Of a stretch of DNA of 64,000 nt, positions 5,373 to 56,245 are shown one piece after another. Under the pieces are notes generated by a model. It ran no database searches and was not told the origin of the DNA. It was given only the letters and a program-made list of their open reading frames with translations. The position numbers and the translations under genes are program-made. This DNA comes from Anaeramoeba ignava BMAN (lineage: Eukaryota; Protista; Anaeramoebae). The DNA lies in NCBI GenBank assembly GCA_028826165.1, contig JAPDFW010000097.1, positions 1 to 64,000 on the forward strand, in the 5' to 3' direction. Position 1 is the stretch's first letter. Every line of letters begins with the position of its first letter.

Positions 5373-8300
5373 TTATTTTTGTTTTGATTTGGTTTTTCTT
5401 TTCTTTATATCTTCTTCATCTTGATTTTCAATTTCAAAAAGCAACTCTTTATTAATTAATCTATCAATAGAATTTTGTTTTTGAAGATATTCTTTGAGCT
5501 TTATTAAAAGCAATTCTTTGTTTTCTTGTCATAACAGCTTTAGCTAATTGAGTTTTTCTCATCATTTTGATCAAAACAGATGTTTTTGGTTGTTTATTTC
5601 GGATTTGATTTTCTAATCGAGTTTTAGATAAATTGATTTTTCATTTCCTTCAATTTCAACTTCTTGAAAGTTTGTTTTGTTCTTTTTGTTCTTCAAGTTG
5701 AGAATAAGTAATTCCTTTGAATTCATTTTCTAATTCTTGAGCGTAATTTTTCAAGTTCTTCTTGATTTTGATTTTGATTTTGATTTTGATTTTGATTTTT
5801 AAGATTTGATTTTTGGATGAATTTCTAAATGATTTTTTAATGAAATTAGTTCTTCTCTTCTTTTTGGAATATAACCGACAATATGATCTTTAACAAAGGA
5901 GATAAATGGTGAGGGAGGCTTTACTTCTGGAGCATAATCCTCAACAGGAAGTAAGATGAGCTCATTAACACTATCAAAAGCCCATTGTGGTTGGATATAA
6001 GCTCTTGAAATGAATCTTCTATCAATTCTTTTACGATCCACAATTTGATGTGTTATTTTTCATCATTTTCCCAAATTCACTTCCTTCTCCTTGCCAACCA
6101 ACTTTACCACCAAAACTTCTGATAACAAATTCAAGCGGAAGTCTTTGGAACCCTTTTGTTAATTTCAAAGAAATAAAACAAATGAATTATTTTTCCATAA
6201 CTTTCCTCTTTTTCTTTTTTTTTTTTAAAAAAAAATTACTTCTCTATTCAAATAAAAAATTTTTCCTTCAAATAAATTCCCATAAATAACTTTTTCTTTC
6301 TTTGTTTTTGTGCTTGTTTGTATTGTTTTCTTGTTGATTCATCTTCATCTTCTTCCATTTTTTGGAAAAATTTTGTTCAACTTCTTGATCTAAACCTTGA
6401 TTTTCTTTTTGATTTTTCTCTTCATTTTGTACATTTATCGCTTCATTTTTTTCGACTGAGATTAATTTTTGTTCAAGAGTTTTAATTCTTTCTCTCATTA
6501 ATTTTTGATTTTCAATTTGATTTTCATTTTCATTTTCAATTTCATTTTGATTTTGATTTTCATTTTCATTTTGATTTTGATTTTCATTTTCATTTAAAAG
6601 AATTAATGCTCCTAAAAGATCTCCATTTGAAAGTTTTTCTTGATCGAATTCAGGAGGATATCGAAGATTAATTGAATAAAATAGTTCATGATTCACAAAT
6701 TTTAAAATGGCTTCATAAAGTTCCAAAAAAGTAAGCATTACTCTAAAATCAATATTTTTAGGAGGATGTTGAGTAAATTGATGAGGAGTAATCCAAGTTA
6801 TTAATTGGCTTTTAATTTCCACTTGAAAATAGATGCCTTTGATTGATACAAAGACTTTTCTTAAAGAATGTGTTTTGATGATATAATTCAAAAATTCGCA
6901 ATAAAGTTTTTGACAGTTTTGTGTTCGATTTGCTGGAACCATTGAACTAGATGGAAGAATTGCGAATAACGAAATCAATGTTATGCAATCGTCTAAATCA
7001 CGAAGTGCGTCAATGAATGTTGGATATCTTTCCTTTACAATGTGATGCAATGTGTATGTTGGTAAATTAGATTCCATCGATTTAATTTTTTGAAATTCTT
7101 TTTTTCCAATTGCTTTTTTAATTTTCTTGTAAAAACTGTTGAATTCTCGAAATTTTTTAATGATTGGTTCGTGCGATAAAAATTTGATATCTTTAATACT
7201 ATAATAAACTTTTCCTGATCCTTTTTTCTTTGGTTGTCTTGGGAATATTCCTTTTAATATGCATAATCGACTAATAATTTTATAAATAATTTTATAAATA
7301 ATTTTATAAATAATTTTATATATAATTTTATAAATAATTTTATATTTAATTTTATATATAATTTTATATTTAATTTTATAAATAATTTTATATATAATTT
7401 TATAAATAATTTTATATTTAATTTTATATTTAATTTTATATTTAATTTTATATTTAATTTTATATTTAATTTTATAAATAATTTTATAAATAATTTTATA
7501 AATAATTTTATAAATAATTTTATAAATAATTTTATAAATAATTTTATAAATAATTTTATAAATAATTTTATATTTAATTTTATAAATAATTTTATATTTA
7601 ATTTTATAAATAATTTTATATTTAATTTTATAAATAATTTTATATTTAATTTTATATTTAATTTTATAATTAATATTATAAATAATTTTATAAATAATTT
7701 TATAAAATAATTTTATATTTAATTTTATATTTAATTTTATAAATAATTTTATAAATAATTTTATAAATAATTTTATATATAATTTTATAAATAATTTTAT
7801 AAATAATTTTATAAATAATTTTATAAATAATTTTATATTTAATTTTATATTTAATTTTATAAATAATTTTTATAAATAATTTTATAAATAATTTTATAAA
7901 TAATTTTATAAATAATTTTATAAATAATTTTATAAATAATTTTATAAATAATTTTATAAATAATTTTATATTTAATTTAATAATTAATTTTATAAATAAT
8001 TTTATAAATAATTTTATATTTAATTTTATATTTAATTTTATATTTAATTTTATAAATAATTTTATAAATAATTTTATAAATAATTTTATAAATAATTTTA
8101 TAAATAATTTTATATATAATTTAATAAATAATTTTATATTTAATTTAATAAATAATTTTATAAATAATTTTATAAATAATTTTATATTTAATTTTTATAA
8201 ATAATTTTATAAATAATTTTATAAATAATTTTATAAATAATTTTATATTTAATTTTATATTTAATTTTATAAATAATTTTATATTTAATTTTATAAATAA

Positions 8301-9040
8301 TTTTTATAATTAATTTTATAAATAATTTTATAAATAATTTTATATTTAATTTTATAATTAATTTTATAAATAATTTTATATTTAATTTTATATTTAATTT
8401 TATAAATAATTTTATAAATAATTTTATAAATAATTTTATAAATAATTTTATAAATAATTTTATATATAATTTTTATATTTAATTTTATATTTAATTTTAT
8501 ATTTAATTTTATATTTAATTTTATATTTAATTTAATATTTAATTTTATAAATAATTTTTATATATATAATTTTATATAAATAATTTAATTAATTAATTTT
8601 ATAAATAATTTTATAATTTAATTTAATAAATAATTTTATAAATAATTTTATAAATAATTTTATAATTAATTTTATATTTAATTTTATAAATAATTTTATA
8701 AATAATTTTATAAACAATTTTATAAATAATTTTATAAATAATTTTATAAATAATTTTATATTTAATTTTATAAATAATTTTATATTTAATTTTTATATTT
8801 AATTTTATTTTTAATTTTATTTTTAATTTTATAAATAATTTTATATTTAATTTTATATTTAATTTTATAAATAATTTTATTAATAAATTTATCAATAATT
8901 TTATAATTAATTTTATAATTAATTTTATTAATAATTTAATACCGAAATTCTGTTAAAGATAATTGTAATTTTCTAAGTGCTTGTCCTCTTGTAAGATATT
9001 TTGATTCAATAACTGGTTTTTTCTGTTTTCTTCTTCCCAT
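5373..9040 (-). CDS. PES1: Pescadillo/Nop7 ribosome biogenesis protein (BRCT domain)
   Basis: [19 protein letters not shown]|[15 protein letters not shown] spliced across intron 7271-8942; [24 protein letters not shown]; [12 protein letters not shown]. The 3' part is frameshifted. Confidence 0.95.
7271..8942 (-). repeat. 1672-bp GT-AG intron of PES1 made almost entirely of a ~12-bp tandem repeat (ATTTTATAAATA and variants)
   Basis: Splicing restores the conserved FRRLCILKG motif; the repeat is directly visible. Confidence 0.9.
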
Positions 9041-9331
9041 TTTTAATTTCTATTTTAAATGTAAATGTAAATGTTTTATATTCAATTTTATCTATTTTAA
9101 AAGGAAAAAGAAAAAAAAAATGAAAAAAAAAAATAAAAAAAATTTTTTTTAAATAAATAAAAAATAAAAAAATGATTCATTTTTCTAAAAGATTATTTCA
9201 ATATTTTTTTTTTAAATAAAAGAATAAAAAAAACGTTTTTTTTCTTTTTCATTTTTTTCATTTTTCCCTTTTATTCTTCTTTTCATTTTCCATTATAAAT
9301 TGAATTAAAATTAAATTTAAAATTAAATTAC

Positions 9332-11663
9332 ATGACAAGAGATATTAATGAAGATGAATTAAAAAGAGTTTTTTTCTTTTCAAAATTTGATCTTTTAAAT
9401 GCTTCAAAATCTCAACAACAAAACAATCAAAATCAAAATTTTAATCAAAAAAGACAACAAGAATTTGTAAATGAAAATTTATTTGAAGAACTTCCTGATG
9501 AAAGTAGATTAAAATTAAAATTAAAATTAAAATTAAAATTAAAATTAAAATTAAAATCAAAAATTAAAATTAAAATTAAAATTAAAATTAAAAATAAAAT
9601 TAAAATTAAAATTAAAATTAAAATTAAAATTAAAATTAAAATTAAAAATAAAATTAAAATTAAAAATAAAATTAAAATTAAAATTAAAAATAAAATTGAA
9701 ATTAAAATTAAAATTAAAATTAAAATTAAAATTAAAATTTAATATTAAAATTAAAATTAATATTAAAATTAAAATTAAAATTAAAATTAAAATTAAAATT
9801 AAAATTAAAATTAAAATTAAAATCAAAATTAAAATTAAAATTAAAATCAAAAATTAAAATTAAAATTAAAATTAAAATCAAAATTAAAATTAAAATTAAA
9901 ATTAAAATTAAAATTAAAATTAAAATTAAAATTAATATTAAAATTAAAATAAAAAAAGTTGTTCTAGAAATTTTTTCATACCTTTTACCCAAAAATTTAA
10001 TAAATTGTGCTTTTACATGCAGAAACTTTAATCGTATTCATGATGATTGGCAACTTTGGAAAAATATAATAAGGAATCATGGATCCGAATTAGATTTTCA
10101 AACAGTAACAAAGGATTATCAAAGTGGTTATTATTATTATTCTCCATATACAACAACCAACTTCAAACTATCAGGAACTTTAGGAATCCAAGAACATTTT
10201 CGAAGTATTGAAAAAGATGAAAATTATCATCCAAATTCAAATATTTCAACTTCAATTTCAAAAAGAACTATTGATAAAATTAATAAAGAACCAAAAAAAC
10301 TTGTTGTTGATCAAATGAAGAAATATATTCAAGCACAAAAAAATTATCTTCGTCAACAAAAAGCAGAAGAATTCAAAAGACAAATAAGAACAATTAAAGA
10401 CGATTATGCTATTAAATTAATTGAGAAAACTCTTGTTTTATCACTATTAGTATTACCTTCTTTATTTTTTGCTCTTAAATTTGATGTTTCATATTCTATT
10501 TTTAATTGGAAATTTTGCTTTTTTCCTTGGCTTTATTCTTCTCTTTTGTTTTTTGTTTGGAGTTCAATGGAATATTATACAAGTTATTCAAGAAATACTG
10601 AAAAATATCTTTTACAAGGAATAATTACTTGTTCAGGATTTTTAACTTTATTTTTTCTTTTTATTTCATTGAAATTGGATCAAAATTTCTCAATTTCAAA
10701 ATGGTGGATATTAAGCCCTTTTGGATTGGCTACATTTACTTTAATAATTTTATGGTCAATATTTTTATACAATGAACCAAGTAAGGAAATGAAGAAAAAT
10801 TAAATATTTATTTAAATATTTATTTTAATATTTAATTTAATATTTATTTTAATATTTATTTTAAATATTTAATTTAATATTTATTTTAATATTTATTTTA
10901 ATATTTAATTTTAATATTTAATTTAATATTTATTTTAATATTTATTTTAATATTTATTTAATATTTAATTTAAATTTTATTTTAATATTTAATTTAATAT
11001 TTAATTTAATATTTATTTTAATATTTATTTTAATATTTATTTTAATATTTATTTTTAATATTTATTTTAATATTTATTTTAATATTTATTTTAATATTTA
11101 TTTTAATATTTATTTTAATATTTATTTTAATATTTATTTTAATATTTATTTTAATATTTATTTTTAAATTTTATTTTAATATTTATTTTAAATTTTATTT
11201 TAAATTTTATTTTAATATTTATTTTAATATTTATTTTAAATTTTATTTTAATATTTTAGATATTTTCGAAAGAGACATACATATTTTCGTATTATTTGTT
11301 TTTTATGTAATGGCTGGACTTTTGCTTGTTTTTATTTCAATTATTAAAGCATTTTCAATTTATGAATCACAAGCAGAAAACCCATCATATAAAGGAGTAT
11401 TTATTCCACTTATATTTCTATCAATTTATCCGATAATTGGTACAATTTTTGTTTGTATTATTCGCCATTCTTCATATTTTTCTCGCACAGATTATTTAGT
11501 TTTTATCATTTCTTGTTCTGTTGGAATTGCTTTTGGATTGTTCTCCTTAATTTTATATCTTAGAATAAAAGGAATTTTTCATATTTATACTTCTATTGTC
11601 TCTTCTTTTGTTTTCTTTCCTTCTTTATATTTACAATACTTAATTTTAGCCAGAAAACTTTAA
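9332..11663 (+). CDS. F-box protein with a multi-pass TMEM185/FAM11-like transmembrane C-terminus
   Basis: Removing intron 9504-9958 gives LFEELPDEIVLEIFSYLLPKNLINCAFTCRNFNRIHDDWQLWKNI (F-box). Removing intron 10781-11259 keeps the frame through several hydrophobic helices with LKLD...WWILSPF-type motifs. Confidence 0.8.
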
Positions 11664-39763: not shown

Positions 39764-42523
39764 TTAATTTGTTTTCTTTTCTGAATTATCACCAGAGATT
39801 TCTGTTTTAATTCTGTGAGCTAAAACGTTAGCAAAATCAACCTTTGTTCCAGTATAAGGTAATTTTTTTCTTAAACTTTTGAAAGTTGTATCTCCCATTT
39901 GTATGTAATTTTGAACAAGGGATTCATGGAATTGATTTTCTAAATTTTGAATCAATTCCACAACTTTTTTTGCAGTTGTTTGAGGATCCTTAATTTTCAA
40001 ATAAGTTTTCAAATAAATTTTCAATTCAATTTTCAAATAAATTTTCAAATAAATTTTCAATTCAATTTTCAAATAAATTTTCATTTCAATTTTCAAATAA
40101 ATTTTCAAATAAATTTTAATTTTAATTTTAATTTTCATTTTCAAATAAATTTTAATTTTCATTTTAATTTTAATTTTCATTTTAATTTTAATTTTCAAAT
40201 AAATTTTCAAATAAATTTTCAAATAAATTTTCAAATAAATTTTCAAATAAATTTTCAATTCAATTTTCAAATAAATTTTCATTTTAATTTTCAAATAAAT
40301 TTTTAATTCAATTTTCAAATAAATTTTTAATTCAATTTTCATTTCAATTTTCAAATAAATTTTAATTTTAATTTTAAAAATTATTTACTGTAACTTGAAG
40401 ATCAGCTTTAAATTCTTTATAAGTAGTAAGTTGTACATTTCCATCTTCATAATAATGAGTATTAACTTTAATTTCACCTTTAAGTGTAGTAGAAGTATTT
40501 GGAGTTCCATTCATTTCCCAAACACTTCTCCAACGACCATTCCTAAATTAATTTTAATTTTAATTTTAATTTTAATTTTTAATTTTTATTTTTATTTTTA
40601 TTTTCAATTTAATTTCAATTTAATTTTTAATTGAAAAATACCAGAAATTAGAAGGACTAAATCTAGCTCCAGTGATACAAATAACAATCTTATTATCCTC
40701 ATCATCATAAACAGAACTTGCTCCTTCTACAAAATAAGTTTCACCATATTTTTGAATTTCTTTTCCAATTACTTCTCGAAGTTCAGTTCCTTTTTCTCCT
40801 TCTTTTTTATCACCTGTAAATTTTGCTGAAAAATGATCAAAACGAAACATCTAAAAAGAAAATTTTTTTAAATCAATTTCGAAATTAAATAATAAATTAA
40901 ATTATAAATAAAATTATAAAATAAATTATAAATAAAATTATAAATAAAATTATAAATTAAAATATAAATTAAATTATAAATTAAATTATAAATTAAATTA
41001 TAAATAAAATTACAAATAAAATTATAAATTAAATTATAAATTAAATTATAAATTAAATTATAAATAAAATTATAAATAAAATTATAAATAAAATTATAAA
41101 TAAAATTATAAATAAAATTATAAATAAAATTATAAATAAAATTATAAATTAAATTATAAATAAAATTATAAATTAAATTATAAATTAAATTATAAATTAA
41201 ATTATAAATAAAATTATAAATAAAATTGTAAATTAAATTATAAATAAAATTATAAATTAAATTATAAATTAAATTATAGATAAAATTATAAATTAAATTA
41301 TAAATTAAAATTATAAATAAAATTATAAATTAAATTATAAATAAAATTATAAATTAAATTATAAATTAAATTATAAATTAAATTATAAATTAAATTATAA
41401 ATAAAATTATAAATTAAGAAATTATAAATTAAATTATAAATTAAATTATAAATTAAATTATAAATAAAATTATAAATTAAATTATAAATTAAATTATAAA
41501 ATAAATTAAATTATAAATTAAATTATAAATAAAATTATAAATTAAATTATAAATTAAAATTATAAATTAAATTATAAATAAAATTATAAATAAAATTATA
41601 AATTAAATTATAAATTAAATTATAAATTAAATTATAAATTAAATTATAAATAAAATTATAAATAAAATTATAAATTAAATTATAAATAAAATTATAAATT
41701 AAATTATAAATAAAATTATAAATAAAATTATAAATTAAATTATAAATAAAATATAAATTAAATTATAAATTAAATTATAAATTAAATTATAAATAAAATT
41801 ATAAATTAAATTATAAATTAAATTATAAATAAAATTATAAATAAAATTATAAATAAAATATAAATTAAATTATAAATTAAATTATAAATAAAATTATAAA
41901 TTAAATTATAAATTAAATTATAAATAAAATTATAAATTAAATTATAAATAAAATTATAAATAAAATTATAAATTAAATTATAAATAAAATTATAAATAAA
42001 ATTATAAATTAAATTATAAATTAAATTATAAATTAAAATATAAATTAAATTATAAATAAAAATATAAATAAAATTATAAATTAAATTGAAAAATAACGTT
42101 TAGAAAATAAATTCGAAATTTTTCAATTAAAATTATTAAAAAAAAAAGCAAAAAAAAAAATTATTACCATTCCCGAAATTGGATCAAGATAATAATCAGG
42201 ATTCTCTTGTGATTCTGAATATTCTGTAACAAGAACAGGATAACCAAGCTCTTCTATAGTATCAAAAACCATTTGGTCTTCATTATATTCCTTCAAACAA
42301 GCGATTATAACCTTATTAACAATTGGATTATCACCCAAAATTGATTTGACATCTATTTATTAATAATAATTAATAATAAATTATTTTTATTATTTTTATT
42401 TAATAAATAAATTAATTTTCTTCTTTTAATACCTGTTAAAACTTCTTTAAATTCTCCAGGAGGTGAAGAGAGAAGAAATTTACTTATAATTCTAATTATT
42501 TCTTCTTCTGAAAGATTTTCCAT
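39764..42523 (-). CDS. CAPZA: F-actin capping protein alpha subunit
   Basis: FLLSSPPGEFKEVLTDV, FSPSNFWNGRWRS, THYYEDGNVQL, TTFKSLRKKLPYTGTKVDF; introns include 40851-42167 and 39989-40388. Confidence 0.95.
40851..42167 (-). repeat. 1317-bp CAPZA intron filled with a ~12-bp (AAATTATAAATT/A)n repeat
   Basis: GT-AG boundaries join PISGM|MFRFDHF; the repeat is visible. Confidence 0.88.
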
Positions 42524-44125: not shown

Positions 44126-45216
44126 ATGAATTTTTCTTTTGGTTTAAGTGATATTTATGGTATTAGTCCAGTGCACAAAAACTCAAACGCATTAGAATTA
44201 TTTCAAGAGAAACAATCAACAAAACAACAAAGAAAAAGAAGTAAAAGAGCAAAAAGATTCACATATGATGAAGATCAAAGGATTTTAGAAGTAAATTAAA
44301 TGCCAAAAAAAAAATAAAAAAAAAAGAAAAAATTTTAAGTTAAATTTATTTAAAAAAAAAAGGGATTTCAAAAATTTGGAAAAGATTGGAAGAAAATTGC
44401 AGAATGGGCTCAATTAGATCGAACAACCTCTCAAATTTCATCGAGATTCTCAAGGAAATTAAAGCATAGAACGGAGCGTTCAACTGAAAATTCAAATCAT
44501 CAATCAGATCTTAATTCTTCAATTCCAAATTTAAATATAAATGAAAAAGTTGAAAATAGTGATGTTGAAAAACTTATTGAAACAGAACAAGAAACAACTA
44601 TTGATAATGAAAGTATTATTGAAGCTGATTTATATCCAAATTCTTTTGTTGATGCTACTACTCAAACTGATTATCCTGATCATGAAGATTTGCAAGATAA
44701 ACTTGTTGATCAACAAACTAGAATTGAACAACTTGAAGCAGAAAATGCTGAAATGCGTAAAAAACTCGCTGAATTACAAACTGTAATTTAAATTAAAATT
44801 AAAATTAAAATTAAAATCCAAATTCAAAAATTAAAATCAAAATTAAAATCTAAATTAAAATCAAAATTAAAATCAAAATTAAAATCAAAATCTAAATTAA
44901 AATTAAAATTAAAAAATGAAAGAGTTTTGAAGAAGAAATTGAAAGAGAAAAAGAAATTACAACAAAAGCAAAAAAAGAACTTCTAAGAGTTCTTCAAAGA
45001 GAATCTTTATTACAAAAACAAAGAAGAAGAGAAGAGGCACAAAAAAATAAAGTAAATTTAGGTTATTTCTCATCACAAAGAACAAAAACAGGTTATGAAG
45101 AGTATTGGATTAACGGAGAAGAAATTATTGAATTTGATGAAAAATATGTAAATAAATAAATAAATAATATAAATAAAAAAAAAATTTTTCACCTTTTGAT
45201 CATTTTTGGATCAAAA

Positions 45217-45248
<32 letters not shown>

Positions 45249-46389
45249 GGAATTTGTTCGAATCGAAGAAGAAGATGTCAGAAGTAAAAAAAGAGAATCA
45301 CAAAGAAGAAAAAACGAGCTTTTAGCAATCAAACAAAGAACAAAAGAGCAAGATCTCGAAATTACTGATTTAATTGATCAAGATCAAATGTATCAACTTC
45401 GGTTAATATCATTGAAAAAACAAAAAACGGATTTAGAGCGAATAAGGGAAAGACTTTTAGCAGAAAAACAAACGCACATGAAAAACTTAATAATGATTGA
45501 GAACGAAGAAGTTTCGAAGTTTCGAGATGTGCCTGTATTAAACGGAGGAAGATATTTGATTCGTTCGTTGATTGGCAAAGGAGGTTTTTCTGAAGTTTTT
45601 ATGGGATATGATCTTGGTGAATTAAGGGATGTTGCTTGCAAAATTCATCAAGTAAATCCGTTATGGACACACGAGAAAAAAAAGAACTACATTCGGCACT
45701 CAATTCGCGAATACGATATCCACAAAAACTTGAATCATCCTCGTGTTGTCAAGCTTTATGATGTTTTTGAAATTGACGAAAATTCGTTTTGCATTATAAT
45801 TGAATACTGCAGTAAAGGCGATCTTGAAAGTCTTCTTAAAACTCGAGGAAAGCTGTCAGAAAGAGAAGCAAGATCAATCATAACTCAGATCTTTTTTGGA
45901 CTTGAATACTTGAACAAACAAAAGCGAAAAATTATTCACTATGATCTCAAACCAGGAAATATTCTTTTTTCTGATGAAGGAATAAAAATAACGGATTTTG
46001 GATTGTCAAAAATTGTTCAAGAAGAAAGTGAGGCTACAGAACTGACTTCTCAAGGTGCAGGAACATATTGGTATCTTCCACCAGAATGTTTTACTTCCTT
46101 AAAACCCAAAATTTCCTCAAAAGTGGATGTTTGGTCTGCTGGCGTTATTTTCTTTGAAATGCTTTATGGTCATCGTCCTTTTGGTGATAATTTGTCTCAA
46201 ACTGAAGTCTGGAATTCAAGAATTATTTCAAATGCTCGATCTGTTGTTTTTCCTAAAAGACCCGTTGTTTCTCAAGAAACACAAGACTTTATTCGTCTTT
46301 GCTTGACTTATGAACAAAGTGAAAGGCCTGATGTTCTTTCTATTTTTAAAAGGCCTTATTTGAAAAGAGAATTCCAAAACAAGAAATAA
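44126..46389 (+). CDS. TLK: Tousled-like kinase with an N-terminal Myb/SANT domain, 4 exons
   Basis: Exons 44126-44290, 44363-44782, 44923-45147 and 45250-46389 join in frame. TLK motifs: LGYFSSQR...EYWING, LIGKGGFSEV, ACKIHQ, HYDLKPGN, LTSQGAGTYWYLPPECF. Confidence 0.93.
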
Positions 46390-46556: not shown

Positions 46557-49500
46557 ATGAATTTCCAAGTTTTTCTTTTTCTTTTTTTTCTTCTTTTTCT
46601 TTTTAATTTAAAAATTATTCTTTCTTCTTGTCCATTTTTATCAAAAACTTATCCAGATTCAGGAACAGAACAAATTGCAGGATTTACATTTGAATTAATT
46701 GTTGAATTTAGTGAAACAATATCAATTCAAAATGAAATGGAAGAAAAAATTCCTTTAAGAAATTTAAGTGATGTTGATTTATCTTATTGGTTTTTTACAA
46801 ATAGTAGAACATATGCTTACACAACATTATATCCTATTTTTCTTTTAAATACTCAATCAAATCAAGTGATTTCTCCAGTTACTGTAAATCAAATTGATAC
46901 AATAGGAGATTCATTTCAAGTTACTTTTCCAATTCTTAATGATAATCAAGAGTAATTAATTTTTTTTTTCCTTTTCTTTTTGATCAATTTAATCAAATTT
47001 TTTTTTATAAATTTTAATTTTGGATTTAATTTTGGATTTAATTTTGGATTTAAAATTGATTTAAAATTGATTTAATTTTGGATTTAAAATTGATTTTATT
47101 TTGGATTTAAAATTAATTTAAAATTGATATAAAATTAATTTAAAATTGATTTAAAATTGATATAAAATTGATATAAAATTGATATAAAATTGATTTAAAA
47201 TTGATTTAAAATTGATTTAAAATTGATTTAAAATTGATATAAAATTGATTTAAAATTGATTTAAAATTGATATAAAATTGATATAAAATTGATTTAAAAT
47301 TGATTTAATTTTGGATTTAAAATTGATATAAAATTGATTTAAAATTGATATAAAATTGATTTAAAATTGATTTAAAATTGATATAAAATTGATTTAAAAT
47401 TGATTTAAAATTGATATAAAATTGATTTAAAATTGATATAAAATTGATTTAAAATTAATATAAAATTGATTTAAAATTGATATAAAATTGATTTAAAATT
47501 GATTTAAAATTGATTTAAAATTGATTTAAAATTGATTTAAAATTGATATAAAATTGATTTAAAATTGATTTAAAATTGATATAAAATTGATTTAAAATTG
47601 ATTTAAAATTGATTTAATTTAAAATTGATTTAAAATTGATTTAAAATTGATTTAAAATTGATTAAAAATTGATTTAAAATTGATTTAAAATTGATTTAAA
47701 ATTGATTTAAAATTGATTTAAAATTGATTTAAAATTGATTTAAAATTGATTTAAAATTGATATAAAATTGATTTAAAATTGATATAAAATTGATTTAAAA
47801 TTGATTTAAAATTGATTTAAAATTGATTTAATTTTGGATTTAAAATTGATTTAATTTTGGATTTAAAATTGATTTTAGTACTTTGGTTCTCTACGTATTG
47901 GATAACCTCTTCTTTAGTGAAAATTATCCACAAAATTCTGTTCAATTTCAGGCCAAATCTTGGTTTTATACAGGAACAAATCCAACAAAACCATGTGAAA
48001 ATTTTACAGTTTTAAATCCAATTAAAGAATTCTGCTCAAATTCATCAACTGAACATTATTCACCAGAATCTCAAATAGTTTGGGAACAACAAATATCAAA
48101 CTTCACTCTGAATTTCCCAACTATTTCTTCATGTACACAATTTGATAAAATATCTTGTATGTATAAACTCATGCTCAGAATATATGTTTCCAATCCAGGA
48201 AATTATTCTAATCTTTCTTTGAAAAATATTTCAATCACATATCAAGACATACAATACAAAATCAGCAGTGATTTAAGCATAAACATCTTAAAAAAAGATA
48301 CATTGGCAAAAATTCCAATTCAATCATTCAATGAATCAATTCATAATTCCAAAGAAACCTATATAGCAGGCCCAGATCCTATTTATTTCGTAGAAAGAAA
48401 GACCCAATGGGCTAACCAACAAGAATTCATCACATATTTTGAAAAATGGAAAAGAGGAGAATTAGTGCTTAGTTCAGATCCAAATTTAAACGGTTCTGAA
48501 ACTCTGGAAATGATCGAAAATTTAGATCAATTTATTTGTAGTTTTTTTGATCTCAATGTTTCAACCACTGAATCAATCATAGATTTTCATTGGAATAAAT
48601 CAAGTTATATCTGGCAAAAACAAACTATTGAGTCAAGTGGTTTTGTATGCGATTCATGTAGTTTTCGTGATTATAATTCATTCTACGCAGATTGGACAAG
48701 ACACATTCTCGAAATTGATCAAGATAATCCTTGGAGAATTTTTCGATTCAATACGCTTAGCCAAATGAACCAAGAAATTCAAATAGATAACGGTATCTCT
48801 GTGTTTCTTTTCGAGAACACTAATCAAAGTATTGTTGATATTCTTAATATATCAAAAGAAAGAGCTGACAATTCTTATTTATCGGAAAATTCAACAAGTG
48901 AAATTAAAATCAACTTTGGATTCGATACTTTTGATAAATTATTCTCATCAAGCGAACAAAATTATGTTCTTTTAGTCCCTGATCTTCCAGAAGTTTTGAC
49001 AGAAAACGGTCCACTTTCACCACAAATCACAACAAATATAACAGGATTCGAAAATTGGCTCACAGTTTTGAACACTTTAATTGGTTCTGAATGTGGATTG
49101 CTTGGAATAAGTTACGAATCTTTTTATAACCAAGAAACTAAATGTGAGGTTCCTTATGGAACTTGTGTTGAACAGCAAATAGAAGATTTGCAAAAAAACG
49201 AACTTGGAAAACTTGGTGATTTTCTTCCTTTATTTTCTTCAAGACTTAATGCTACCTTGAAATCTTCTTTTTCTGATCTTGATTCAATTCGAGATCGAAT
49301 CTCAATTGACAACTCAACTTATAATCTTCTTCTCGAATATTCCCAACAAGAAATTCTTAACATGGATCTTTATCTCAATCTTGATTTGATCTCTTTCCAT
49401 CAGCCATTTATTGTTCTTTCTGACCATGAATGGGATGTGCTAAGCGAAGAAGAGAAGCAACAAGCCATTTGCTCTCAAATTGATTTCCAACCAAATTCAA

Positions 49501-51443
49501 CTGTATTCAACGAAGACAAAGGAAGACTCTTTGTGAGCACTTCTAATGGAGGAACAGAGCCTGGAGACTTCTCTGTTTCTGTTTCTTGTGAGTTCGAATA
49601 CGATCCCCATTTTAATCAGATTTCTGGTCTTTTGCCAAGCCAAAGTGTTGAATTTGAATTTGATCTTGAAATCCAGAACCAAACATGGAATTTAACATCC
49701 CAAATCAACAAATCTTGCGTAGTTTCTTTCAATTCAAACAAGAAACTGTTGTGGGATACAAAAGGGAAAAATTTTGCCTGCATCAAAAATTTGACACTTT
49801 TTTTTGGACGGTTTATTCCAGCTTGTGAACTTGAGAGAAACGAAACATATGTGAAACAAAACATCCCAGAAATGCCGTATTTGCTGTTGAATTCTCAAGG
49901 CAATATCAACGTCTCATTTGGATTTGAAAGAAATGAGAGGAATATTGGAGAGCTTGAAGTGATGATAACAAACACAGGAGTTGTTTCAGGAAAATTTGAA
50001 GTGAAAATGGTCTGTGAAAATACATCCTCAATTTCTCCAAAACTAGAATCACAAGAAATTGAAGTGGGATCTTTATCTTCTTCAAACACAACAATCGAAA
50101 TGAAATTTGATGATTTCCCACAAGAAGTGATTTTTTTAGACAATGTTTATTATTCATATTCCTGCAATCTGTCTATTGAAGCTTTAACACCAGCTCGTGA
50201 GTGTTGGAGTTCATTGAACAAATCAGCCGCAGATTCAGTTGTTTTTATAGTTCAAAATGGACTATTTATGAATGATGTTGTGATTGAAAATCAATGGAAT
50301 AACTCAAATACTTCAGTTTCAATCACAAGTTCTCCAGCAAACTCCAAGTTCTTTCTGTTTCTTTCCAAAGTTTATGGATGGAATAACAAATGGGTTCTTC
50401 TTTTGTTCTTTTTTCTGTCCATTTTATCTGTTCCTTTTGTGATTTTTCTTATCATATTTTGTGTTAAAAAAGCAAAAAGAGAAGTTAAAGATTTATCAAT
50501 TACTTTAAGTGATTGGATTCAAATCCAAAATTTAAATAAGACAATCCAAGAAAAGAAAAAATCCAAAACACAGAAAAAACAAACAAACTCATTTCTCTGG
50601 ATTGGAGAAAATGAAATACACGAGGAAACATTGATTAACTTAAGAAATCGAAAGAAAAAAAAAGTGGATCAAAATTCGCTTGATGAAGTTACATTTAATT
50701 ATCATAAAAAAAAATCAAAAGAAGATCAACAAGAACAAGAAGAAGAATCAGTTAGAATTCTTCATAATTTTTGGATAGGCTTGGGTTACAAATCGTTTGT
50801 TTTTCTTGATAATCCAGAAATATGGAAAAAATGTGTTGTTCATGGTGATCTTTTTTTACCTGAAAAAAATTCATTTGAAAATTCAAATCAAATTACAGTT
50901 GAGTTCGAAGGTTTTGATGATGTTGAAGTAGAAATTGATTGGGATAATAATCCCCAAGATGATTCTGATGTGATTGTGAAACTAGTCAGAAAGGAATTTG
51001 TTCAAGATTCTTTAGAAAATGTAAAGAAACTCAAAATCATCCGTTATTTTCTTTTAACTCCTTCTAAATTATATCATCAATTTTGGGATGTTTTTATTCA
51101 TAATGTTAAAAAAAATGTATCTGATGATATTATCTCTCAATTTACTTTTGGCAAAACTGGATATTCTTTTTCTCAAGAAGACAATTTACTAAATGAAAAA
51201 AATCCTATTCAAAAAAATTCAATTTTTGATTTTGATTCCAATTCAAATCCAAATCAAATTAGTGATTTTTCTACAAGTGAAATTTCTGATGAAGATTATT
51301 TGGATTCTGATGATCTTTTTTTGGATAATCAAAGATCCTTTTCTCTTTTGGAAAACTCAAATGATAAAAGTTTTAATCAAGATTTTGGAAAAGAAAATTT
51401 TGAAATGAGTGATTCTTTAGAAATTGAATATGAAGAAAAATAA
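46557..51443 (+). CDS. Divergent HAP2/GCS1-like (fusexin, class II fusogen) type I membrane protein, 1319 aa
   Basis: Signal peptide; in-frame intron 46952-47878; HAP2-GCS1 signature ECGLLGISYESFYNQETKCEVPYGTCVEQQIEDL (49089-49190); two domain-III-like Ig motifs; one TM helix (~50391-50465); long acidic cytoplasmic tail. Confidence 0.78.
46952..47878 (+). repeat. 927-bp intron filled with an 11-bp (AAAATTGATTT/ATA)n repeat
   Basis: GT...TAG boundaries join NDNQD|TLVLYV in frame. Confidence 0.88.
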
Positions 51444-51531: not shown

Positions 51532-53703
51532 ATGGGAATTATTTTTGCACTTTTAAGAGATTACTTTTATCCTTTCTTAGTTTTCCTTTTAATGTTGATG
51601 ACTTTTTTAATACCTCCAGCAATAAAACCAAAACAAAAAGATTTTGATGAGATGAATATGCATTATCCAGAAAATTCAAGTACAGGAAGTTTAGATAACA
51701 CAATTGATAGACTTTTTTGGTTTGTTCAAATTTCTGATCTTCATTTAAATAAATTCAAAGAAAATTTTGGATCACAATTTGAAAGAGTTTGTACAAATTA
51801 TATTGGTTCAATAAATCCAAAATTTGTGATTGTAACAGGAGATATAACAGATTCAAAGGAAAATGGAAAATATCCACAAAGAAGTAAACATTATATTGAA
51901 GAATGGGAAAAATATCAAGAAATTTTGAATAATTGTGGTGTTAATAATTCTTCTTTTTGGTTTGATATTAGAGGAAATCATGATAATGCAGCTGTTTTGA
52001 AAAAATATGCATCAGATAATTATTTTTATGATTACTCTCCACAATCTCCTTTTCTTAATTCATTAGATAGACCTTCTATGTATAGTTTTGTTCATCAAGA
52101 ACCATATGGAAATTATCAATTTGTTGGAATGGATCTTGGTACTTATCCACTTATTTCTGGACCTTTGGATTTCTTTATGTTTATTGATAAAGATAAATTA
52201 GATGAATTGGAAGAAAATTTTGAATTCAATAAAAACAATTATGATATTAATCAAACTATTGTTTTTACTCATTCACCTTTAACAACAGTTCAACGCCCTT
52301 TAACAAAATCTTCATCAGGAAAAAATCTTGATAAGATTCTTAAGGATAATCGAGTATTAAGTGTTATTGATGGTCATTTTCATAGTAAAGAAATGTATTC
52401 ACGTTTATTTTCGAAAAAAGATACAATTTTTGATTTACAAGTAAATGATGTTAAATCAGATGGAGCAATTAGAATATTTGCAATTGATAATGATTTATTT
52501 TCTTTTACAGATACAGATACAACTGATAAAGATGATCCTATAATTGTAATTACAAATCCAAAAGATAGTAGATTTATAAGTCAAAAAGAACCACTTTACA
52601 AAATCAAACAATCAACTTTTATCCGAGTTTTAATTTTCCATTCATCAACATTTGATCCATTAAGAATATCAACAGTTAGTTGTGATATTGATGGAGAAAC
52701 AATATCTTATTCAATGACAAGAGTTAATCCAACTGAACCACTTTGGGTTGCAGCATGGAATCCAAATGATTATTCTGATGGAATTCATGAAATTACAATC
52801 ACAATCAAAGATCTTGGTGGAAATGAAGTTATTACTCAAACACAAGATTTTTCAGTTGATAAAACACCTTCTTTTATTGGATATAATTTCTTTGAAATTG
52901 TTCAAAGACACAATCTCTATAGTTTTATGGTTGGATGGGATGTTGTTCTTATTTTTATTTATGTTATTCAATTTGGAACACTTCCAAAAATTATCAAGAA
53001 AATTATGAAAAGAACACCAACAAAATTTGAAATGTTTTCAGAACAATTTGAAGATAAAACAACTAAAATTACATTTTTATCATTTTTTGGATATACTTAT
53101 AAATCAATGATTTGGAAATTTTCAATGATTCCAACATTTAAATGGATATTAATTTGTACTGTTGGATGGCTTTTTGTTTTTGGACCTAATTTCGCAGATT
53201 TTGCTGATGGAAAATGGGGAGCATCTTTTATGTTTGGAGTTGCTTTTGATGGTTCAAAACATCTTTGTTCGATGTTATTTTGGTATGCAATGATTGGTTT
53301 TGGAGGAATTTTCTTACCAACTTTAATTATGATTTCACTTCCTGTAATTGAACCACCAAGATCAAGTAATTACAAATTAAGATTATTAATTCATCCTGAA
53401 ACTTTAATAGCTTTAACTGGAGTGATTGGATTTCTTGAATATTTTTCTTATAATCTTTTCACTGGTTATAAAGGATCTTCTTTAATTCTTAGTTTTGGAT
53501 TATGGTGGCCTACTATGATTTGTTTTGCTCTTATTGTTACAACCATTATTCAAGATTATAGAAAGATTATCAAACTTAAAAGAGAAGAACAATCTGGAGA
53601 TTCTGAGAATAGTTATCTTAATAATGATATTGAAAAAGTGCAATCAAATCCAAATTCTGATTCAAATTTGGAAGGTTCAGATTCTACAAAAGATTTACTT
53701 TAA
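51532..53703 (+). CDS. TMEM62-like calcineurin-like metallophosphoesterase membrane protein, copy 1
   Basis: QISDLH, GDITD, DIRGNHD, GHFH; N-terminal anchor, Ig-like middle region, C-terminal TM helices. Confidence 0.9.
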   Translation: MGIIFALLRDYFYPFLVFLLMLMTFLIPPAIKPKQKDFDEMNMHYPENSSTGSLDNTIDRLFWFVQISDLHLNKFKENFGSQFERVCTNYIGSINPKFVIVTGDITDSKENGKYPQRSKHYIEEWEKYQEILNNCGVNNSSFWFDIRGNHDNAAVLKKYASDNYFYDYSPQSPFLNSLDRPSMYSFVHQEPYGNYQFVGMDLGTYPLISGPLDFFMFIDKDKLDELEENFEFNKNNYDINQTIVFTHSPLTTVQRPLTKSSSGKNLDKILKDNRVLSVIDGHFHSKEMYSRLFSKKDTIFDLQVNDVKSDGAIRIFAIDNDLFSFTDTDTTDKDDPIIVITNPKDSRFISQKEPLYKIKQSTFIRVLIFHSSTFDPLRISTVSCDIDGETISYSMTRVNPTEPLWVAAWNPNDYSDGIHEITITIKDLGGNEVITQTQDFSVDKTPSFIGYNFFEIVQRHNLYSFMVGWDVVLIFIYVIQFGTLPKIIKKIMKRTPTKFEMFSEQFEDKTTKITFLSFFGYTYKSMIWKFSMIPTFKWILICTVGWLFVFGPNFADFADGKWGASFMFGVAFDGSKHLCSMLFWYAMIGFGGIFLPTLIMISLPVIEPPRSSNYKLRLLIHPETLIALTGVIGFLEYFSYNLFTGYKGSSLILSFGLWWPTMICFALIVTTIIQDYRKIIKLKREEQSGDSENSYLNNDIEKVQSNPNSDSNLEGSDSTKDLL

Positions 53704-56245
53704 ATTTTATTTCAAAATATTTTTAATTAATATTTAATAATAAAAATTAATAATAAATTATTTTATTATAATTTGGAATATTTTTTAAATACATTTTTAA
53801 TACATTTCTAATATATATTTAATTAAATTATTATTAATATTTTTATTAATTTTATTTCAAAATATTTTTAATTAATATTTAATAATAAAAATTAATAATA
53901 AATTATTTAATTATAATTTGGAATATTTTTTAAATACATTTTTAATACATTTTTAATATTTATTTAATTAATTTATTATTAATATTTTTATTAATTTTAT
54001 TTCAAAATATTTTTAATAAATATTTAATAATAAAAATTAATAATAAATTATTTAATTATAATTTGAAATATTTTTAAATACATTTTTAATACATTTTTAA
54101 TATTTATTTAATTAATTTATTATTAATATTTTTATTAATTTTATTTCAAAATATTTTTAATTAATATTTAATAATAAAAATTAATAATAAATTATTTAAT
54201 TATAATTTGGAATATTTTTAAATATATTTTTAATACATTTTTAATATTTATTTAATTAATTTATTATTAATGTTTTTATCAATTTAATTTCAAAATATTT
54301 TTAATTAATATTTAATAATAAAAATTAATAATAAATTATTTTATTATAATTTGGAATATTTTTAAATACACTTCTAATACATTTCTAATATTTATTTAAT
54401 TAATTTATTATTAATATTTTTATTAATTTTATTTCAAAATATTTTTAATTAATATTTAATAATAAAAATTAATAATAAATTATTTTATTATAATTTAGAA
54501 TATTTTTAAATACACTTCTAATACATTTCTAATATATATTTAATTAATTTATTATTAATATTTTTATTAATTTTATTTCAAAATATTTTTAATAAATATT
54601 TAATAATAAAAATTAATAATAAATTATTTAATTATAATTTAGAATATTTTTAAATACATTTTTAAATACATTTCTAATATTTATTTAATTAATTTATTAT
54701 TAATATTTTTATTAATTTAATTTCAAAAATATTTTTAATTAATATTTAATAATAAAAATTAATAATAAATTATTTTATTATAATTTAGAATATTTTTAAA
54801 TATATTTTTAATACATTTCTAATATTTATTTAATTAAATTATTATTAATATTTTTATTAATTTTATTTCAAAATATTTTTAATTAATATTTAATAATAAA
54901 AATTAATAATAAATTATTTTATTATAATTTAGAATATTTTTAAATACACTTCTAATACATTTCTAATATATATTTAATTAATTTATTATTAATATTTTTA
55001 TTAATTTTATTTCAAAATATTTTTAATTAATATTTAATAATAAAAATTAATAATAAATTAATTAATTATAATTTAGAATATTTTTAAATATATTTTTAAT
55101 ACATTTCTAATATTTATTTAATTAAATTATTATTAATATTTTTATTAATTTAATTTCAAAATATTTTTAATTAATATTTAATAATAAAAATTAATAATAA
55201 ATTATTTAATTATAATTTGAAATATTTTTAAATATATTTTTAATACATTTCTAATATTTAATTAATTAAATTATTATTAATATTTTTATTAATTTTATTT
55301 CAAAATATTTTTAATAAATATTTAATAATAAAAATTAATAATAAATTATTTTTATTATAATTTAGAATATTTTTAAATACATTTCTAATACATTTCTAAT
55401 ATTTATTTAATTAATTTATTATTAATATTTTTATTAATTTTATTTCAAAATATTTTTAATTAATATTTAATAATAAAAATTAATAATAAATTATTTAATA
55501 ATAATTTAGAATATTTTTAAATACATTTTTAATACATTTCTAATATATATTTAATTAATTTTATTATTAATATTTTTATTAATTTAATTTCAAAATATTT
55601 TTAATTAATATTTAATAATAAAAATTAATAATAAAAATATTTTATTATAATTTAGAATATTTTTAAATACATTTTTAATACATTTTTAATATATATTTAA
55701 TTAATTTATTATTAATATTTTTATTAATTTTATTTCAAAAATATTTTTAATTAATATTTAATAATAAAAATTAATAATAAATTATTTTATTATAATTTAG
55801 AATATTTTTAAATACACTTCTAATACATTTCTAATATATATTTAATTAATTTATTATTAATATTTTTATTAATTTAATTTCAAAATATTTTTAATAAATA
55901 TTTAATAATAAAAATTAATAATAAATTATTTAATTATAATTTGGAATATTTTTAAATACATTTTTAATACATTTTTAATATTTATTTAATTAATTTATTA
56001 TTAATATTTTTATTAATTTTATTTCAAAATATTTTTAATAAATATTTAATAATAAAAATTAATAATAAATTATTTAATTATAATTTGGAATATTTTTTAA
56101 ATATATTTTTAATACATTTCTAATATTTATTTAATTAATTTATTATTAATATTTTTATTAATTTTATTTCAAAATATTTTTAATTAATATTTAATAATAA
56201 AAATTAATAATAAATTAATTAATTATAATTTGGAATATTTTTTAA
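53703..56245. repeat. Tandem satellite of ~17.5 copies of a 144-145-bp almost pure AT unit
   Basis: The TTTCAAAA marker recurs at 53713, 53858, 54003, 54147, 54291, 54435 ... 56025, 56170 (18 occurrences). Confidence 0.95.

What the first reader, a model, noticed from the sequence alone, without database searches (positions are those of the whole stretch)
46557..51443. Large, divergent HAP2/GCS1-like fusexin with extra Ig-like domains
Seen, in HAP2 order: CMYKLMLRIYV (cf. CxxKxVxxL), INILKKDTLAKIP...SKETYI (cf. ITxxKS...KPxE), SGFVCDSC (cf. QGFCCxC), RHILEIDQDNPWRIF (cf. AHCLR...W..F), ECGLLGISYESFYNQETKCEVPYGTCVEQQI (cf. ECxKIGVxYxAFxxQ...C..P.xSCLxNQL), then domain-III-like GRLFVSTSNGGTEPGDFSVSVSC. 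Unusual features: a second such Ig repeat (GELEVMITNTGVVSGKFEVKMVC), an N-terminal extension resembling a bacterial Big_5 Ig domain (TYPDSGTEQIAGFTFELIVEFSETI) and a ~320-aa cytoplasmic tail. Known: HAP2/GCS1 is the ancestral gamete fusogen with a class II viral fusion fold, and archaeal Fsx1 has an additional domain IV. Inference: evidence of cryptic sex or cell fusion in this protist, or a new multi-Ig fusexin subfamily.
Basis: partly seen in the sequence, partly recalled or inferred. Interest (0 to 1): 0.85.

Follow-up and report, generated by a model that had tools for sequence, protein, structure and literature searches.

The report
Second, divergent four-domain HAP2 fusogen
This gene of the anaerobic amoeba Anaeramoeba ignava encodes a second, very divergent copy of the ancient gamete-fusion protein HAP2, with an extra domain next to the membrane; it belongs to a little-noticed HAP2 subfamily also found in other protists and in close relatives of animals.

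Summary
Window 46557-51443 (+) is a two-exon gene whose 1319-aa product is identical to the GenBank protein 'protein hapless 2 [Anaeramoeba ignava]'. It passes the Pfam HAP2-GCS1 cut-off (70 bits against 27.4). Its AlphaFold model matches solved HAP2 ectodomains best (Foldseek E 1e-17, VIA Z 15.5), then archaeal Fsx1, phlebovirus Gc and EFF-1. So it is a true fusexin, already named as such by automatic annotation.

New here:
- The genome also has a canonical 761-aa HAP2 on another contig (441 bits), so this gene is a paralogue.
- A tree test rejects a recent Anaeramoeba-specific duplication.
- It shares rare features with proteins of A. flamelloides (misnamed Nop52), Paratrimastix, Mayorella and a metagenomic eukaryote: a shortened, cysteine-poor fusion-loop region and a roughly 150-aa beta-rich fourth domain between domain III and the membrane anchor.
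- The linker and fourth domain also occur in holozoan HAP2-like proteins.

The fourth domain resembles domain III only weakly (P about 1e-4 to 1e-3, low-confidence fold). The 'Big_5' N-terminal domain is an unconfirmed lead. The 326-aa tail is real.

Function is inferred: cell or gamete fusion, probably alongside the canonical HAP2. No expression data could be obtained.

The parts
46557..46951 (+). Exon 1: start codon, signal peptide (aa 1-24) and first part of the N-terminal extension (aa 25-131, plus two bases of codon 132)
   Evidence: ORF and splice donor GTAATT at 46952. The translation equals P0001 1-131.
46952..47878 (+). Intron (GT..AG, 927 bp, 9.7% G+C), filled by an 11-bp minisatellite (47023-47875, 77.5 copies)
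   Evidence: The splice is inferred from sequence and from identity with the annotated protein; no reads could be laid.
47879..51443 (+). Exon 2: the rest of the protein (aa 132-1319) and the TAA stop
47879..48128 (+). Second part of the N-terminal extension (to aa 215), which precedes domain I. The whole extension (aa 25-215) is shared with A. flamelloides and weakly with Mayorella.
   Evidence: phmmer gives 2e-20 to P0002 and 0.007 to P0003. It is beta-rich in the model at pLDDT 60-73. There is no Pfam family.
48129..49403 (+). Domains I and II of the class II fold (aa 216-640)
   Evidence: Pfam HAP2-GCS1. VIA-align to 5mf1 gives Z 13.0, rmsd 5.7, 282 residues aligned, model range 185-611.
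48639..48710 (+). Shortened fusion-loop (cd-loop) region, aa 386-409: signature G-F-x-C-x-x-C-x-x-R followed by an aromatic-rich loop. It lacks about 20 residues and three of the five cysteines of canonical HAP2.
   Evidence: Alignments; motif scan.
49089..49181 (+). HAP2 hallmark motif of domain II (C..GISYxxF....C..P.GTC), aa 536-566
49404..49808 (+). Domain III (aa 641-775), an Ig-like beta-sandwich
   Evidence: Model pLDDT is about 90. VIA Z 9.5 to P. berghei HAP2 domain 3, 7lr4.
49809..50258 (+). Linker (G-x-F-x-x-x-C-x-L) and extra fourth domain (aa 776-925) with conserved cysteines and an E-C-W-S motif; absent from canonical HAP2
   Evidence: The fold model shows seven strands but low confidence.
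50259..50390 (+). Stem (aa 926-969)
50391..50459 (+). Single transmembrane helix (aa 970-992)
   Evidence: Hydropathy scan and position.
50460..51440 (+). Cytoplasmic tail (aa 993-1319): basic near the membrane, acidic at the end, with a short motif shared with relatives
   Evidence: It has no family assignment.

Best explanation
The gene encodes a type I membrane glycoprotein of the HAP2/GCS1 (fusexin, class II fusogen) family. It is the second of two HAP2 genes in Anaeramoeba ignava. It belongs to a distinct, old HAP2 subfamily marked by three features: a shortened, aromatic-rich fusion-loop region with fewer disulfides; an added beta-sandwich domain, probably a diverged copy of domain III, between domain III and the stem; and a long cytoplasmic tail. 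Anaeramoeba adds an N-terminal beta-rich extension. Shown: family membership, fold, gene structure, paralogy and subfamily signatures. Inferred: like other HAP2 proteins it inserts the tip of domain II into the opposing membrane, trimerises and folds back to merge two cell membranes. It most likely does this during gamete or cell fusion together with, or on the partner cell of, the canonical HAP2, as with the two HAP2 proteins of Dictyostelium and Leishmania. The extra domain would lengthen the membrane-proximal arm that zips along the trimer core. My odds: HAP2-family member 0.97; member of a separate subfamily rather than a recent duplicate 0.8; acts in cell-cell fusion 0.6; is itself an active fusogen 0.4.
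For: - Family: Pfam PF10699 70.2 bits, above the 27.4 cut-off; sequence hits to solved HAP2 of C. merolae, T. cruzi, Arabidopsis and Chlamydomonas.
- Fold: for the AlphaFold model (core pLDDT 70-95), the eight top Foldseek rows are HAP2 chains (E 1e-17 to 1e-12), then Fsx1, RVFV Gc and EFF-1. VIA-align gives Z 15.5 (7s0k, 394 residues aligned), 13.4 (5ow3), 13.0 (5mf1) and 10.9 (Fsx1).
- Annotation: the product is identical to the GenBank 'protein hapless 2'.
- Paralogy: a canonical HAP2 lies at C137:94145-96644, P0022, 441 bits over the whole profile. Only these two loci appear in four genome-wide searches.
- Orthologues: A. flamelloides (31% identity over the full length) and Paratrimastix.
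- Subfamily signatures.
- Tree: the protein is placed apart from P0022. The AU test rejects one Anaeramoeba clade (delta lnL 121, p 4e-52).
- Precedents for two cooperating HAP2 proteins: PMC10630298 (Leishmania HAP2-1 and HAP2-2, Plasmodium HAP2p) and PMC8784728 (Dictyostelium HgrA and HgrB).
- Other sex genes: HOP2 and MND1 are present in the genome.
Against: - No expression, splicing or localisation data.
- The region that carries the fusion loops in canonical HAP2 is cut down, and three conserved cysteines are missing.
- The A. flamelloides orthologue has also lost two of the three cysteines of the hallmark motif and no longer hits Pfam. This could mean relaxed constraint on the fusogenic tip.
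- The tree has few rows, long branches and skewed composition, and the clade tested was named after the tree had been seen.
- SPO11 was not detected and DMC1 is reported absent (PMC12722695), so a standard meiotic cycle is not assured.
Confidence: 0.6

Rival explanations
1. It is a HAP2-derived protein that no longer fuses membranes. It could be an adhesion, recognition or regulatory partner of the canonical HAP2, or a scaffold that co-trimerises with it.
For: The fusion-loop region is shortened and has lost cysteines. The hallmark cysteines are further eroded in A. flamelloides, whose protein falls below Pfam detection. The Pfam score is only 70 bits against 441 for the canonical copy.
Against: The whole DI-DII-DIII fold is kept. 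The loop that remains is aromatic-rich, with an invariant Arg and Tyr in all three aligned orthologues, as expected for a membrane-insertion surface. HAP2 insertion motifs are known to differ widely between lineages (own knowledge: Fedry et al. 2018). In Leishmania the divergent paralogue HAP2-2 is the one most needed for mating (PMC10630298).
Confidence: 0.27
2. It is a fast-evolving recent duplicate of the canonical Anaeramoeba HAP2, and its likeness to Paratrimastix, Mayorella and holozoan proteins is long-branch attraction.
For: Long end branches and composition bias were flagged by the tree tool. Only 18 sequences were available.
Against: The AU test rejects that clade (p 4e-52). Independent rare characters, none of them in the canonical copy, are shared with the other lineages: the roughly 20-residue deletion in the cd-loop region, the linker motif, and the extra domain with its conserved cysteines and E-C-W-S motif.
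Confidence: 0.08
3. It is a class II fusion glycoprotein captured from a virus or mobile element, not a cellular HAP2.
For: Class II viral proteins appear among the fold matches. A transposon was noted elsewhere in the window (scan note s1-692253, not tested here).
Against: All best sequence and fold matches are eukaryotic HAP2. The gene has a host-type intron with the same kind of minisatellite as the canonical HAP2's introns. Its neighbours are ordinary cell genes: a Tousled-like kinase and a TMEM62-like phosphoesterase. Orthologues exist in two further protist genomes.
Confidence: 0.02
4. It serves non-sexual cell-cell or intracellular membrane fusion, for example somatic fusion of amoebae or handling of the symbiont-bearing membrane system.
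For: EFF-1/AFF-1 show that fusexins can serve somatic fusion (PMC9259645). Sex has never been seen in metamonads (bioRxiv 10.1101/2021.03.14.435266). SPO11 was not detected here.
Against: There is no direct evidence for it. Every characterised HAP2 acts in mating. HOP2, MND1 and a canonical HAP2 are present.
Confidence: 0.1

Closest known systems
Canonical HAP2/GCS1 (Chlamydomonas 5mf1/6e18/6dbs, Arabidopsis 5ow3, C. merolae 7s0k, and A. ignava's own P0022)
   Same: Pfam family. Class II DI/DII/DIII fold (Z 11-15.5). Hallmark domain II motif. Domain III motif G-x-L-x-V-x-x-x-N-x-G...C. Signal peptide plus one membrane anchor.
   Different: Only 26% identity to P0022 over 224 aa. The G-F-C-C-x-C ... 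R ... C ... A-H-C-L block is replaced by a short G-F-x-C-x-x-C-x-x-R block. It has a 190-aa N-terminal extension and an extra roughly 150-aa domain between DIII and the stem, where canonical proteins have a short Cys-rich stem. The tail is 326 aa.
Second HAP2 paralogues of other protists (Leishmania HAP2-2, Plasmodium HAP2p, Dictyostelium HgrA/HgrB)
   Same: Two HAP2-family genes in one genome, one of them divergent. In Leishmania and Dictyostelium both are needed for mating (PMC10630298, PMC8784728).
   Different: Those duplications are described as lineage-restricted (for example, to the Leishmaniinae and Strigomonadinae). No extra ectodomain domain is reported in the papers I read. None of them was among the 21 sequence hits, so homology to this particular subfamily is untested.
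Holozoan HAP2-like proteins (Capsaspora P0005, Sphaeroforma P0009, Creolimax P0018, sponge Corticium P0007)
   Same: They share the DIII end motif (L-W..G-K..C), the G-x-F-x-x-x-C-x-L linker and a second beta-rich domain before the membrane anchor. They fall on the same side of the tree.
   Different: They lack the E-C-W-S motif, the N-terminal extension and the G-F-x-C-x-x-C signature. Their tails give sub-threshold DNMT1-RFD hits that the Anaeramoeba tail does not.
Archaeal Fsx1 (7p4l), the only fusexin described with a domain IV
   Same: Class II fold plus a fourth ectodomain domain stacked after domain III (PMC9259645). Fold match Z 10.9.
   Different: The match to Fsx1 ends at model residue 751, before the extra domain. 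Fsx1 domain IV is a small chitin-binding-like fold (PMC9259645). Here the extra domain is a larger beta-sandwich with a domain III-like motif, so the two fourth domains look independent.

Membership tests
HAP2/GCS1 (Pfam PF10699; fusexin superfamily) | Profile match above the curated gathering score | tested here: met
   70.2 bits against 27.4, covering profile positions 119-457 of 515; 66.9 bits in the six-frame genome search.
HAP2/GCS1 (Pfam PF10699; fusexin superfamily) | Three-domain class II fusion-protein fold (DI beta-sandwich, elongated DII, Ig-like DIII) | tested here: met
   Predicted model only. Foldseek E 1e-17 to 7s0k, with all top hits HAP2. VIA Z 15.5, 13.4 and 13.0 to three HAP2 structures. 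Best ESM Atlas match is a plant HAP2 cluster.
HAP2/GCS1 (Pfam PF10699; fusexin superfamily) | Hallmark domain II motif C-x-K-I-G-V-S-Y-x-A-F...C..P..S-C | tested here: met
   Present with all three cysteines at aa 536-566. Two of the three cysteines are lost in the A. flamelloides orthologue.
HAP2/GCS1 (Pfam PF10699; fusexin superfamily) | Canonical cysteine block G-F-C-C-x-C ... R ... C ... A-H-C-L-R that frames the fusion loops | tested here: not met
   It is replaced by G-F-V-C-D-S-C-S-F-R plus a 13-residue aromatic loop. Three cysteines and about 20 residues are missing. All seven canonical sequences that span this region keep the block. This is a variant within the family, not grounds for exclusion, given the profile and fold results.
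HAP2/GCS1 (Pfam PF10699; fusexin superfamily) | Type I topology: signal peptide, large ectodomain, one membrane anchor, cytoplasmic tail | tested here: met
   There are only two hydrophobic segments, aa 2-28 and 968-998, by hydropathy window. The exon-2 part of the ectodomain has 29 N-x-S/T sites and 18 cysteines.
HAP2/GCS1 (Pfam PF10699; fusexin superfamily) | Trimeric post-fusion hairpin and membrane-fusion activity; expression in gametes | not testable with these tools
   A trimer of the ectodomain exceeds the 1000-residue limit of complex prediction.
Four-domain HAP2 subfamily (proposed here) | Linker G-x-F-x-x-x-C-x-L after DIII, followed by an extra beta-rich domain with conserved cysteines | tested here: met
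   It is present in P0001, P0002, P0004, P0005, P0006, P0007, P0009 and P0018, and absent from the canonical sequences.
Four-domain HAP2 subfamily (proposed here) | The extra domain is a duplicate of domain III | tested here: inconclusive
   BLASTP E 5e-4; Pfam DIII part E 0.0015; hhalign P 2.5e-4 at 43% probability. Foldseek's best hit is HAP2 DIII at E 5e-3, on a model of pLDDT 50. VIA wide gives only generic beta-sandwiches, with HAP2 DIII at rank 48, Z 4.9.
Big_5 / SbsA bacterial Ig-like domain (PF13205) | Profile match to PF13205 in the N-terminal extension | tested here: not met
   No Pfam family at E up to 10 for the N-termini of P0001, P0002 and P0004, and no PF13205 hit for P0003. All listed family-bearing top hits of the ESM Atlas feature search carry Big_5, but at score 0.89 with 142 shared features, which the tool rates as a lead only.
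Fsx1-type domain IV | The fourth domain is structurally like Fsx1 domain IV | tested here: not met
   The alignment to 7p4l covers model residues 190-751 only. The profile of the extra domain finds no PDB sequence at E up to 10.

The most novel reading that the evidence does not exclude
Eukaryotes have two ancient HAP2 lineages. One is the canonical three-domain form. The other is a four-domain form with its own short aromatic membrane-insertion loop and a duplicated domain III. It is retained in metamonads (Anaeramoeba, Paratrimastix), amoebozoans (Mayorella) and perhaps holozoans. Anaeramoeba keeps both, which would point to an ancestral two-fusogen (bilateral or sex-specific) gamete fusion system dating back to near the last eukaryotic common ancestor.
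Probability: 0.25. Interest if true: 0.75.

Novelty: new variant of a known kind. Interest (0 to 1): 0.5.

Why it matters
HAP2 is the one gamete fusogen traceable to the root of eukaryotes, and the only fusexin reported with a fourth domain is archaeal Fsx1. A conserved eukaryotic HAP2 subfamily with a fourth ectodomain domain and a rebuilt fusion-loop region, coexisting with a canonical HAP2 in one genome, has three uses:
- It gives a natural experiment on which parts of the class II machine are needed for fusion.
- It bears on whether early eukaryotes used one fusogen or two.
- It adds fusion genes to the case for a hidden sexual or cell-fusion cycle in Anaeramoeba, an organism whose meiotic toolkit is reported as unusual and in which sex has never been seen.

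It also corrects annotation. The A. flamelloides orthologue is misnamed as a nucleolar protein, and the Paratrimastix one is 'hypothetical'.

Tried and rejected
- The three word-indexed homologue searches returned only the query's own record. The AT-rich low-complexity words saturated the candidate list. Relatives came only from the exhaustive phmmer search, which gave 21 hits, so the alignment used for AlphaFold was shallow (17 rows).
- Expression and splice check failed. The only run holding the gene is not on record as RNA.
Locus L007, which a tool created and which contains them, was not used.
- The extra domain folded alone gave pLDDT 49.9, so its fold searches are weak evidence. Its profile finds nothing in PDB sequences.
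- The tail has no Pfam family and no ESM Atlas hit. Sub-threshold DNMT1-RFD hits occur in the tails of four relatives (E 0.004-0.04). The Anaeramoeba tails match those only over a 24-column motif (hhalign P 0.0037 at 9% probability), so I do not claim a shared domain.
- Big_5 was rejected as a tested assignment.
- A recent lineage-specific duplication was rejected. A viral origin was rejected.
- Complex prediction was not used. A trimer of DI-DIII is over its size limit, and I claim no specific protein pair.
- I did not build or send a joined spliced sequence. Exons were searched by reference, and the full-length protein was used only as the database record P0001.
- Two further 'HAP2-like' notes of this scan on other pieces of the genome could not be located. 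Four genome-wide profile or protein searches find only the C98 and C137 loci.


Full report
GENE AND ORGANISM

The window is extremely AT-rich eukaryotic DNA.
- Exon 1 is 46557-46951.
- The intron is GT..AG, 46952-47878. It has 9.7% G+C and is almost wholly an 11-bp minisatellite of 77.5 copies.
- Exon 2 is 47879-51443 and ends in TAA.

I searched the exons by reference and did not build a joined sequence myself. The word-indexed search returned a database protein, P0001 (1319 aa), named 'protein hapless 2 [Anaeramoeba ignava]' by NCBI. Exon 1 equals its residues 1-131, the split codon GA+T gives Asp132, and exon 2 equals residues 133-1319. So the organism is Anaeramoeba ignava, and the gene model and its HAP2 name already exist in public annotation. 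I found no paper that discusses the gene: only three papers in the library hold both 'Anaeramoeba' and 'HAP2', and in those I saw neither treats it.

IS IT A HAP2?

Yes.
- Pfam HAP2-GCS1 scores 70.2 bits (E 1.8e-19) against a cut-off of 27.4.
- phmmer finds solved HAP2 proteins from C. merolae, T. cruzi, Arabidopsis and Chlamydomonas.
- An AlphaFold model of the ectodomain (17-row alignment, mean pLDDT 64.6, core 70-95, domain III about 90) has HAP2 chains as its eight best Foldseek rows (E 1e-17 to 1e-12). These are followed by archaeal Fsx1, Rift Valley fever virus Gc, EFF-1 and alphavirus E1.
- VIA-align gives Z 15.5 (7s0k, 394 residues aligned), 13.4 (5ow3), 13.0 (5mf1, rmsd 5.7), 11.6 (5ow4), 10.9 (Fsx1), 8.8 (EFF-1) and 9.5 (isolated P. 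berghei domain III).
- The best ESM Atlas shape match is a plant HAP2 cluster.

IT IS A PARALOGUE

A six-frame search of the whole assembly (42.8 Mb, 147 contigs) with PF10699 finds a second locus, C137:94145-96644 (-), in at least three exons that score 181, 181 and 41 bits. Its product is P0022 (761 aa), also named 'protein hapless 2'. It matches the whole profile at 441 bits and has the classic cysteine block, one domain III, a short Cys-rich stem and a membrane anchor. The two proteins share 26% identity over 224 residues. Three more genome-wide searches, with a general HAP2 profile, the DIII-DIV profile and the DI/DII part of this protein, find only these two loci.

RELATIVES AND SUBFAMILY

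The exhaustive search of 1.84 billion representatives gave only 21 hits at E 1e-3 or better.
- The best hit is a 1353-aa A. flamelloides protein (E 9e-80, 31% identity), colinear from signal peptide to tail. It is misnamed 'Nnp-1/Nop52'.
- Next come a Mayorella transcript (E 1.5e-13) and a 1203-aa 'hypothetical' Paratrimastix pyriformis protein (E 7e-12), followed by proteins of Capsaspora, Sphaeroforma, Creolimax and the sponge Corticium, and metagenomic proteins.
- Several of these (A. flamelloides, Paratrimastix, Mayorella, Sphaeroforma, Creolimax) do not reach Pfam's HAP2 model at all.

Four shared, rare characters set this group apart from canonical HAP2.
1. Canonical proteins have G-F-C-C-x-C, about 20 residues with a conserved Arg and Cys, and then A-H-C-L-R. 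The A. ignava, A. flamelloides, Mayorella, Paratrimastix and metagenomic P0006 proteins instead have W-x-K...G-[FY]-x-C-x-x-C-x-x-R and a short loop. In A. ignava the loop is rich in Phe, Tyr and Trp.
2. Domain III ends in L-W..G-K..C.
3. A linker G-x-F-x-x-x-C-x-L follows.
4. After the linker comes an extra beta-rich domain of about 150 residues with conserved cysteines, plus E-C-W-S in the protist members, before the stem and anchor.

Characters 3 and 4 also occur in the holozoan proteins. Character 2 is seen in Capsaspora, Sphaeroforma and Creolimax but not in the sponge protein.

A quick maximum-likelihood tree splits the 18 sequences into a canonical half, which holds P0022, and a half that holds this protein (SH-aLRT 97). 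The AU test rejects a tree in which the three Anaeramoeba proteins form one clade (delta lnL 121, p 4e-52). There are caveats: few rows, long branches, skewed composition, and a clade named after the tree had been seen. The shared insertions and deletions are the stronger argument.

THE EXTRA DOMAIN

- Between the two Anaeramoeba species it is the best-conserved part: 36% identity, against 27% for domain III and 33% for DI/DII.
- Its likeness to domain III rests on one motif, G-x-L-x-V-x-x-x-N-x-G...V-x-x-C. BLASTP to the protein's own domain III gives E 5e-4. The DIII part of the Pfam profile gives E 0.0015. Weak phmmer hits fall on the DIII of many canonical HAP2s, all in register. hhalign against a canonical DIII alignment gives P 2.5e-4 at 43% probability.
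- Folded alone it is a seven-strand beta structure, but at pLDDT 49.9. Foldseek's best hit is P. berghei HAP2 domain 3 (E 5e-3). VIA-align over 48,161 chains gives only generic beta-sandwiches (Z up to 6.9), with HAP2 DIII at rank 48.

I conclude that a fourth domain is shown and that 'duplicated domain III' is likely but not shown. It is not like Fsx1 domain IV: the Fsx1 match stops before it, and Fsx1 DIV is a small chitin-binding-like fold that its authors described as found only in archaeal fusexins (PMC9259645).

N-TERMINUS AND TAIL

- The 190-aa N-terminal extension is shared with A. flamelloides (2e-20) and weakly with Mayorella. It is beta-rich in the model.
- No Pfam family matches the extension at E up to 10. 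A language-model feature search puts Big_5 clusters on top, but at 0.89 with 142 shared features, which the tool calls a lead only.
- The 326-aa tail is basic next to the membrane and acidic at its end, and it matches no family. A short Y-F-L-x-x-P-x-x-x-Y motif is shared with relatives whose tails give sub-threshold DNMT1-RFD hits, but the support is weak.

FUNCTION

Nothing here measures function. By homology the protein should insert the tip of domain II into a target membrane, trimerise and fold back. The short aromatic loop with its invariant Arg and Tyr is the candidate insertion surface, and the fourth domain would lengthen the arm that packs against the trimer.

Two HAP2 proteins acting together have precedents in Dictyostelium (PMC8784728) and Leishmania, where the divergent copy is the more important one and is needed on both partners (PMC10630298). 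Against an active fusogen stand the loss of cysteines around the loop and the further decay of the hallmark motif in A. flamelloides.

The genome has HOP2 and MND1. I detected neither SPO11 domain, and DMC1 is reported missing (PMC12722695). Sex in Anaeramoeba is therefore plausible but not standard, and a somatic fusion role cannot be excluded.

I worked beside those places and sent none of their letters to any search afterwards.

VERDICT

The gene's identity as a HAP2 homologue is already in GenBank. What is new is that it is a paralogue belonging to a conserved four-domain HAP2 subfamily with a rebuilt fusion-loop region. Interest is moderate.

Noticed in passing
window 47023-47875 (intron); also L005 3283-3523 and 4308-5677: The introns of both HAP2 genes of this genome are filled with short-period minisatellites. 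Here the unit is 11 bp (GATTTAAAATT) in 77.5 copies. In the canonical gene's introns and flanks the repeats read as long Leu-Ile or Asp-Phe-Asn runs in the frames where they stay open. Such introns break six-frame searches and read-laying.
   Followed up: partly
P0002 (A. flamelloides KAJ6254940.1): The full-length orthologue of this HAP2 paralogue is annotated 'nnp-1 protein putative nuclear protein 1 nop52', which looks like a misannotation. It has also lost two of the three cysteines of the HAP2 hallmark motif and gives no Pfam hit.
   Followed up: partly
G000:C98:157337-157516 (-) and G000:C13:289140-289322 (+): The meiosis-associated genes MND1 (73 bits) and HOP2/TBPIP (60 bits) are present. 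MND1 lies on the same contig as this gene, about 100 kb away. Neither Pfam domain of SPO11 (TP6A_N, Toprim) was detected in the assembly.
   Followed up: partly
window 45196-46389 (+) and 51532-53703 (+): The flanking genes are a Tousled-like protein kinase (Pkinase, 206 bits) and a TMEM62-like metallophosphoesterase with an Ig-like domain. They are ordinary cell genes with no evident link to HAP2.
   Followed up: partly
tails of P0004, P0005, P0009 and P0018: The cytoplasmic tails of four HAP2-like relatives each give a sub-threshold hit (E 0.004-0.04) to the same part of the DNMT1-RFD profile (positions 74-112). A conserved cytoplasmic module in this HAP2 subfamily may be worth folding.
   Followed up: partly
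L006 4056-4985 and 5001-6665: On a compact metagenomic eukaryotic contig, the HAP2-like P0006 (554 aa) is preceded, 15 bp upstream on the same strand, by a 309-aa gene with no family. The pair may be one split gene call of a full-length four-domain HAP2.
   Followed up: no
window 8001-10000, 40001-42000 and 54001-56000: These stretches have only 4-8% G+C with strong negative GC skew. They are presumably long AT-only intergenic or intronic repeats.
   Followed up: no
The tool itself says this is no evidence of anything. They were left out of all later searches.
   Followed up: no
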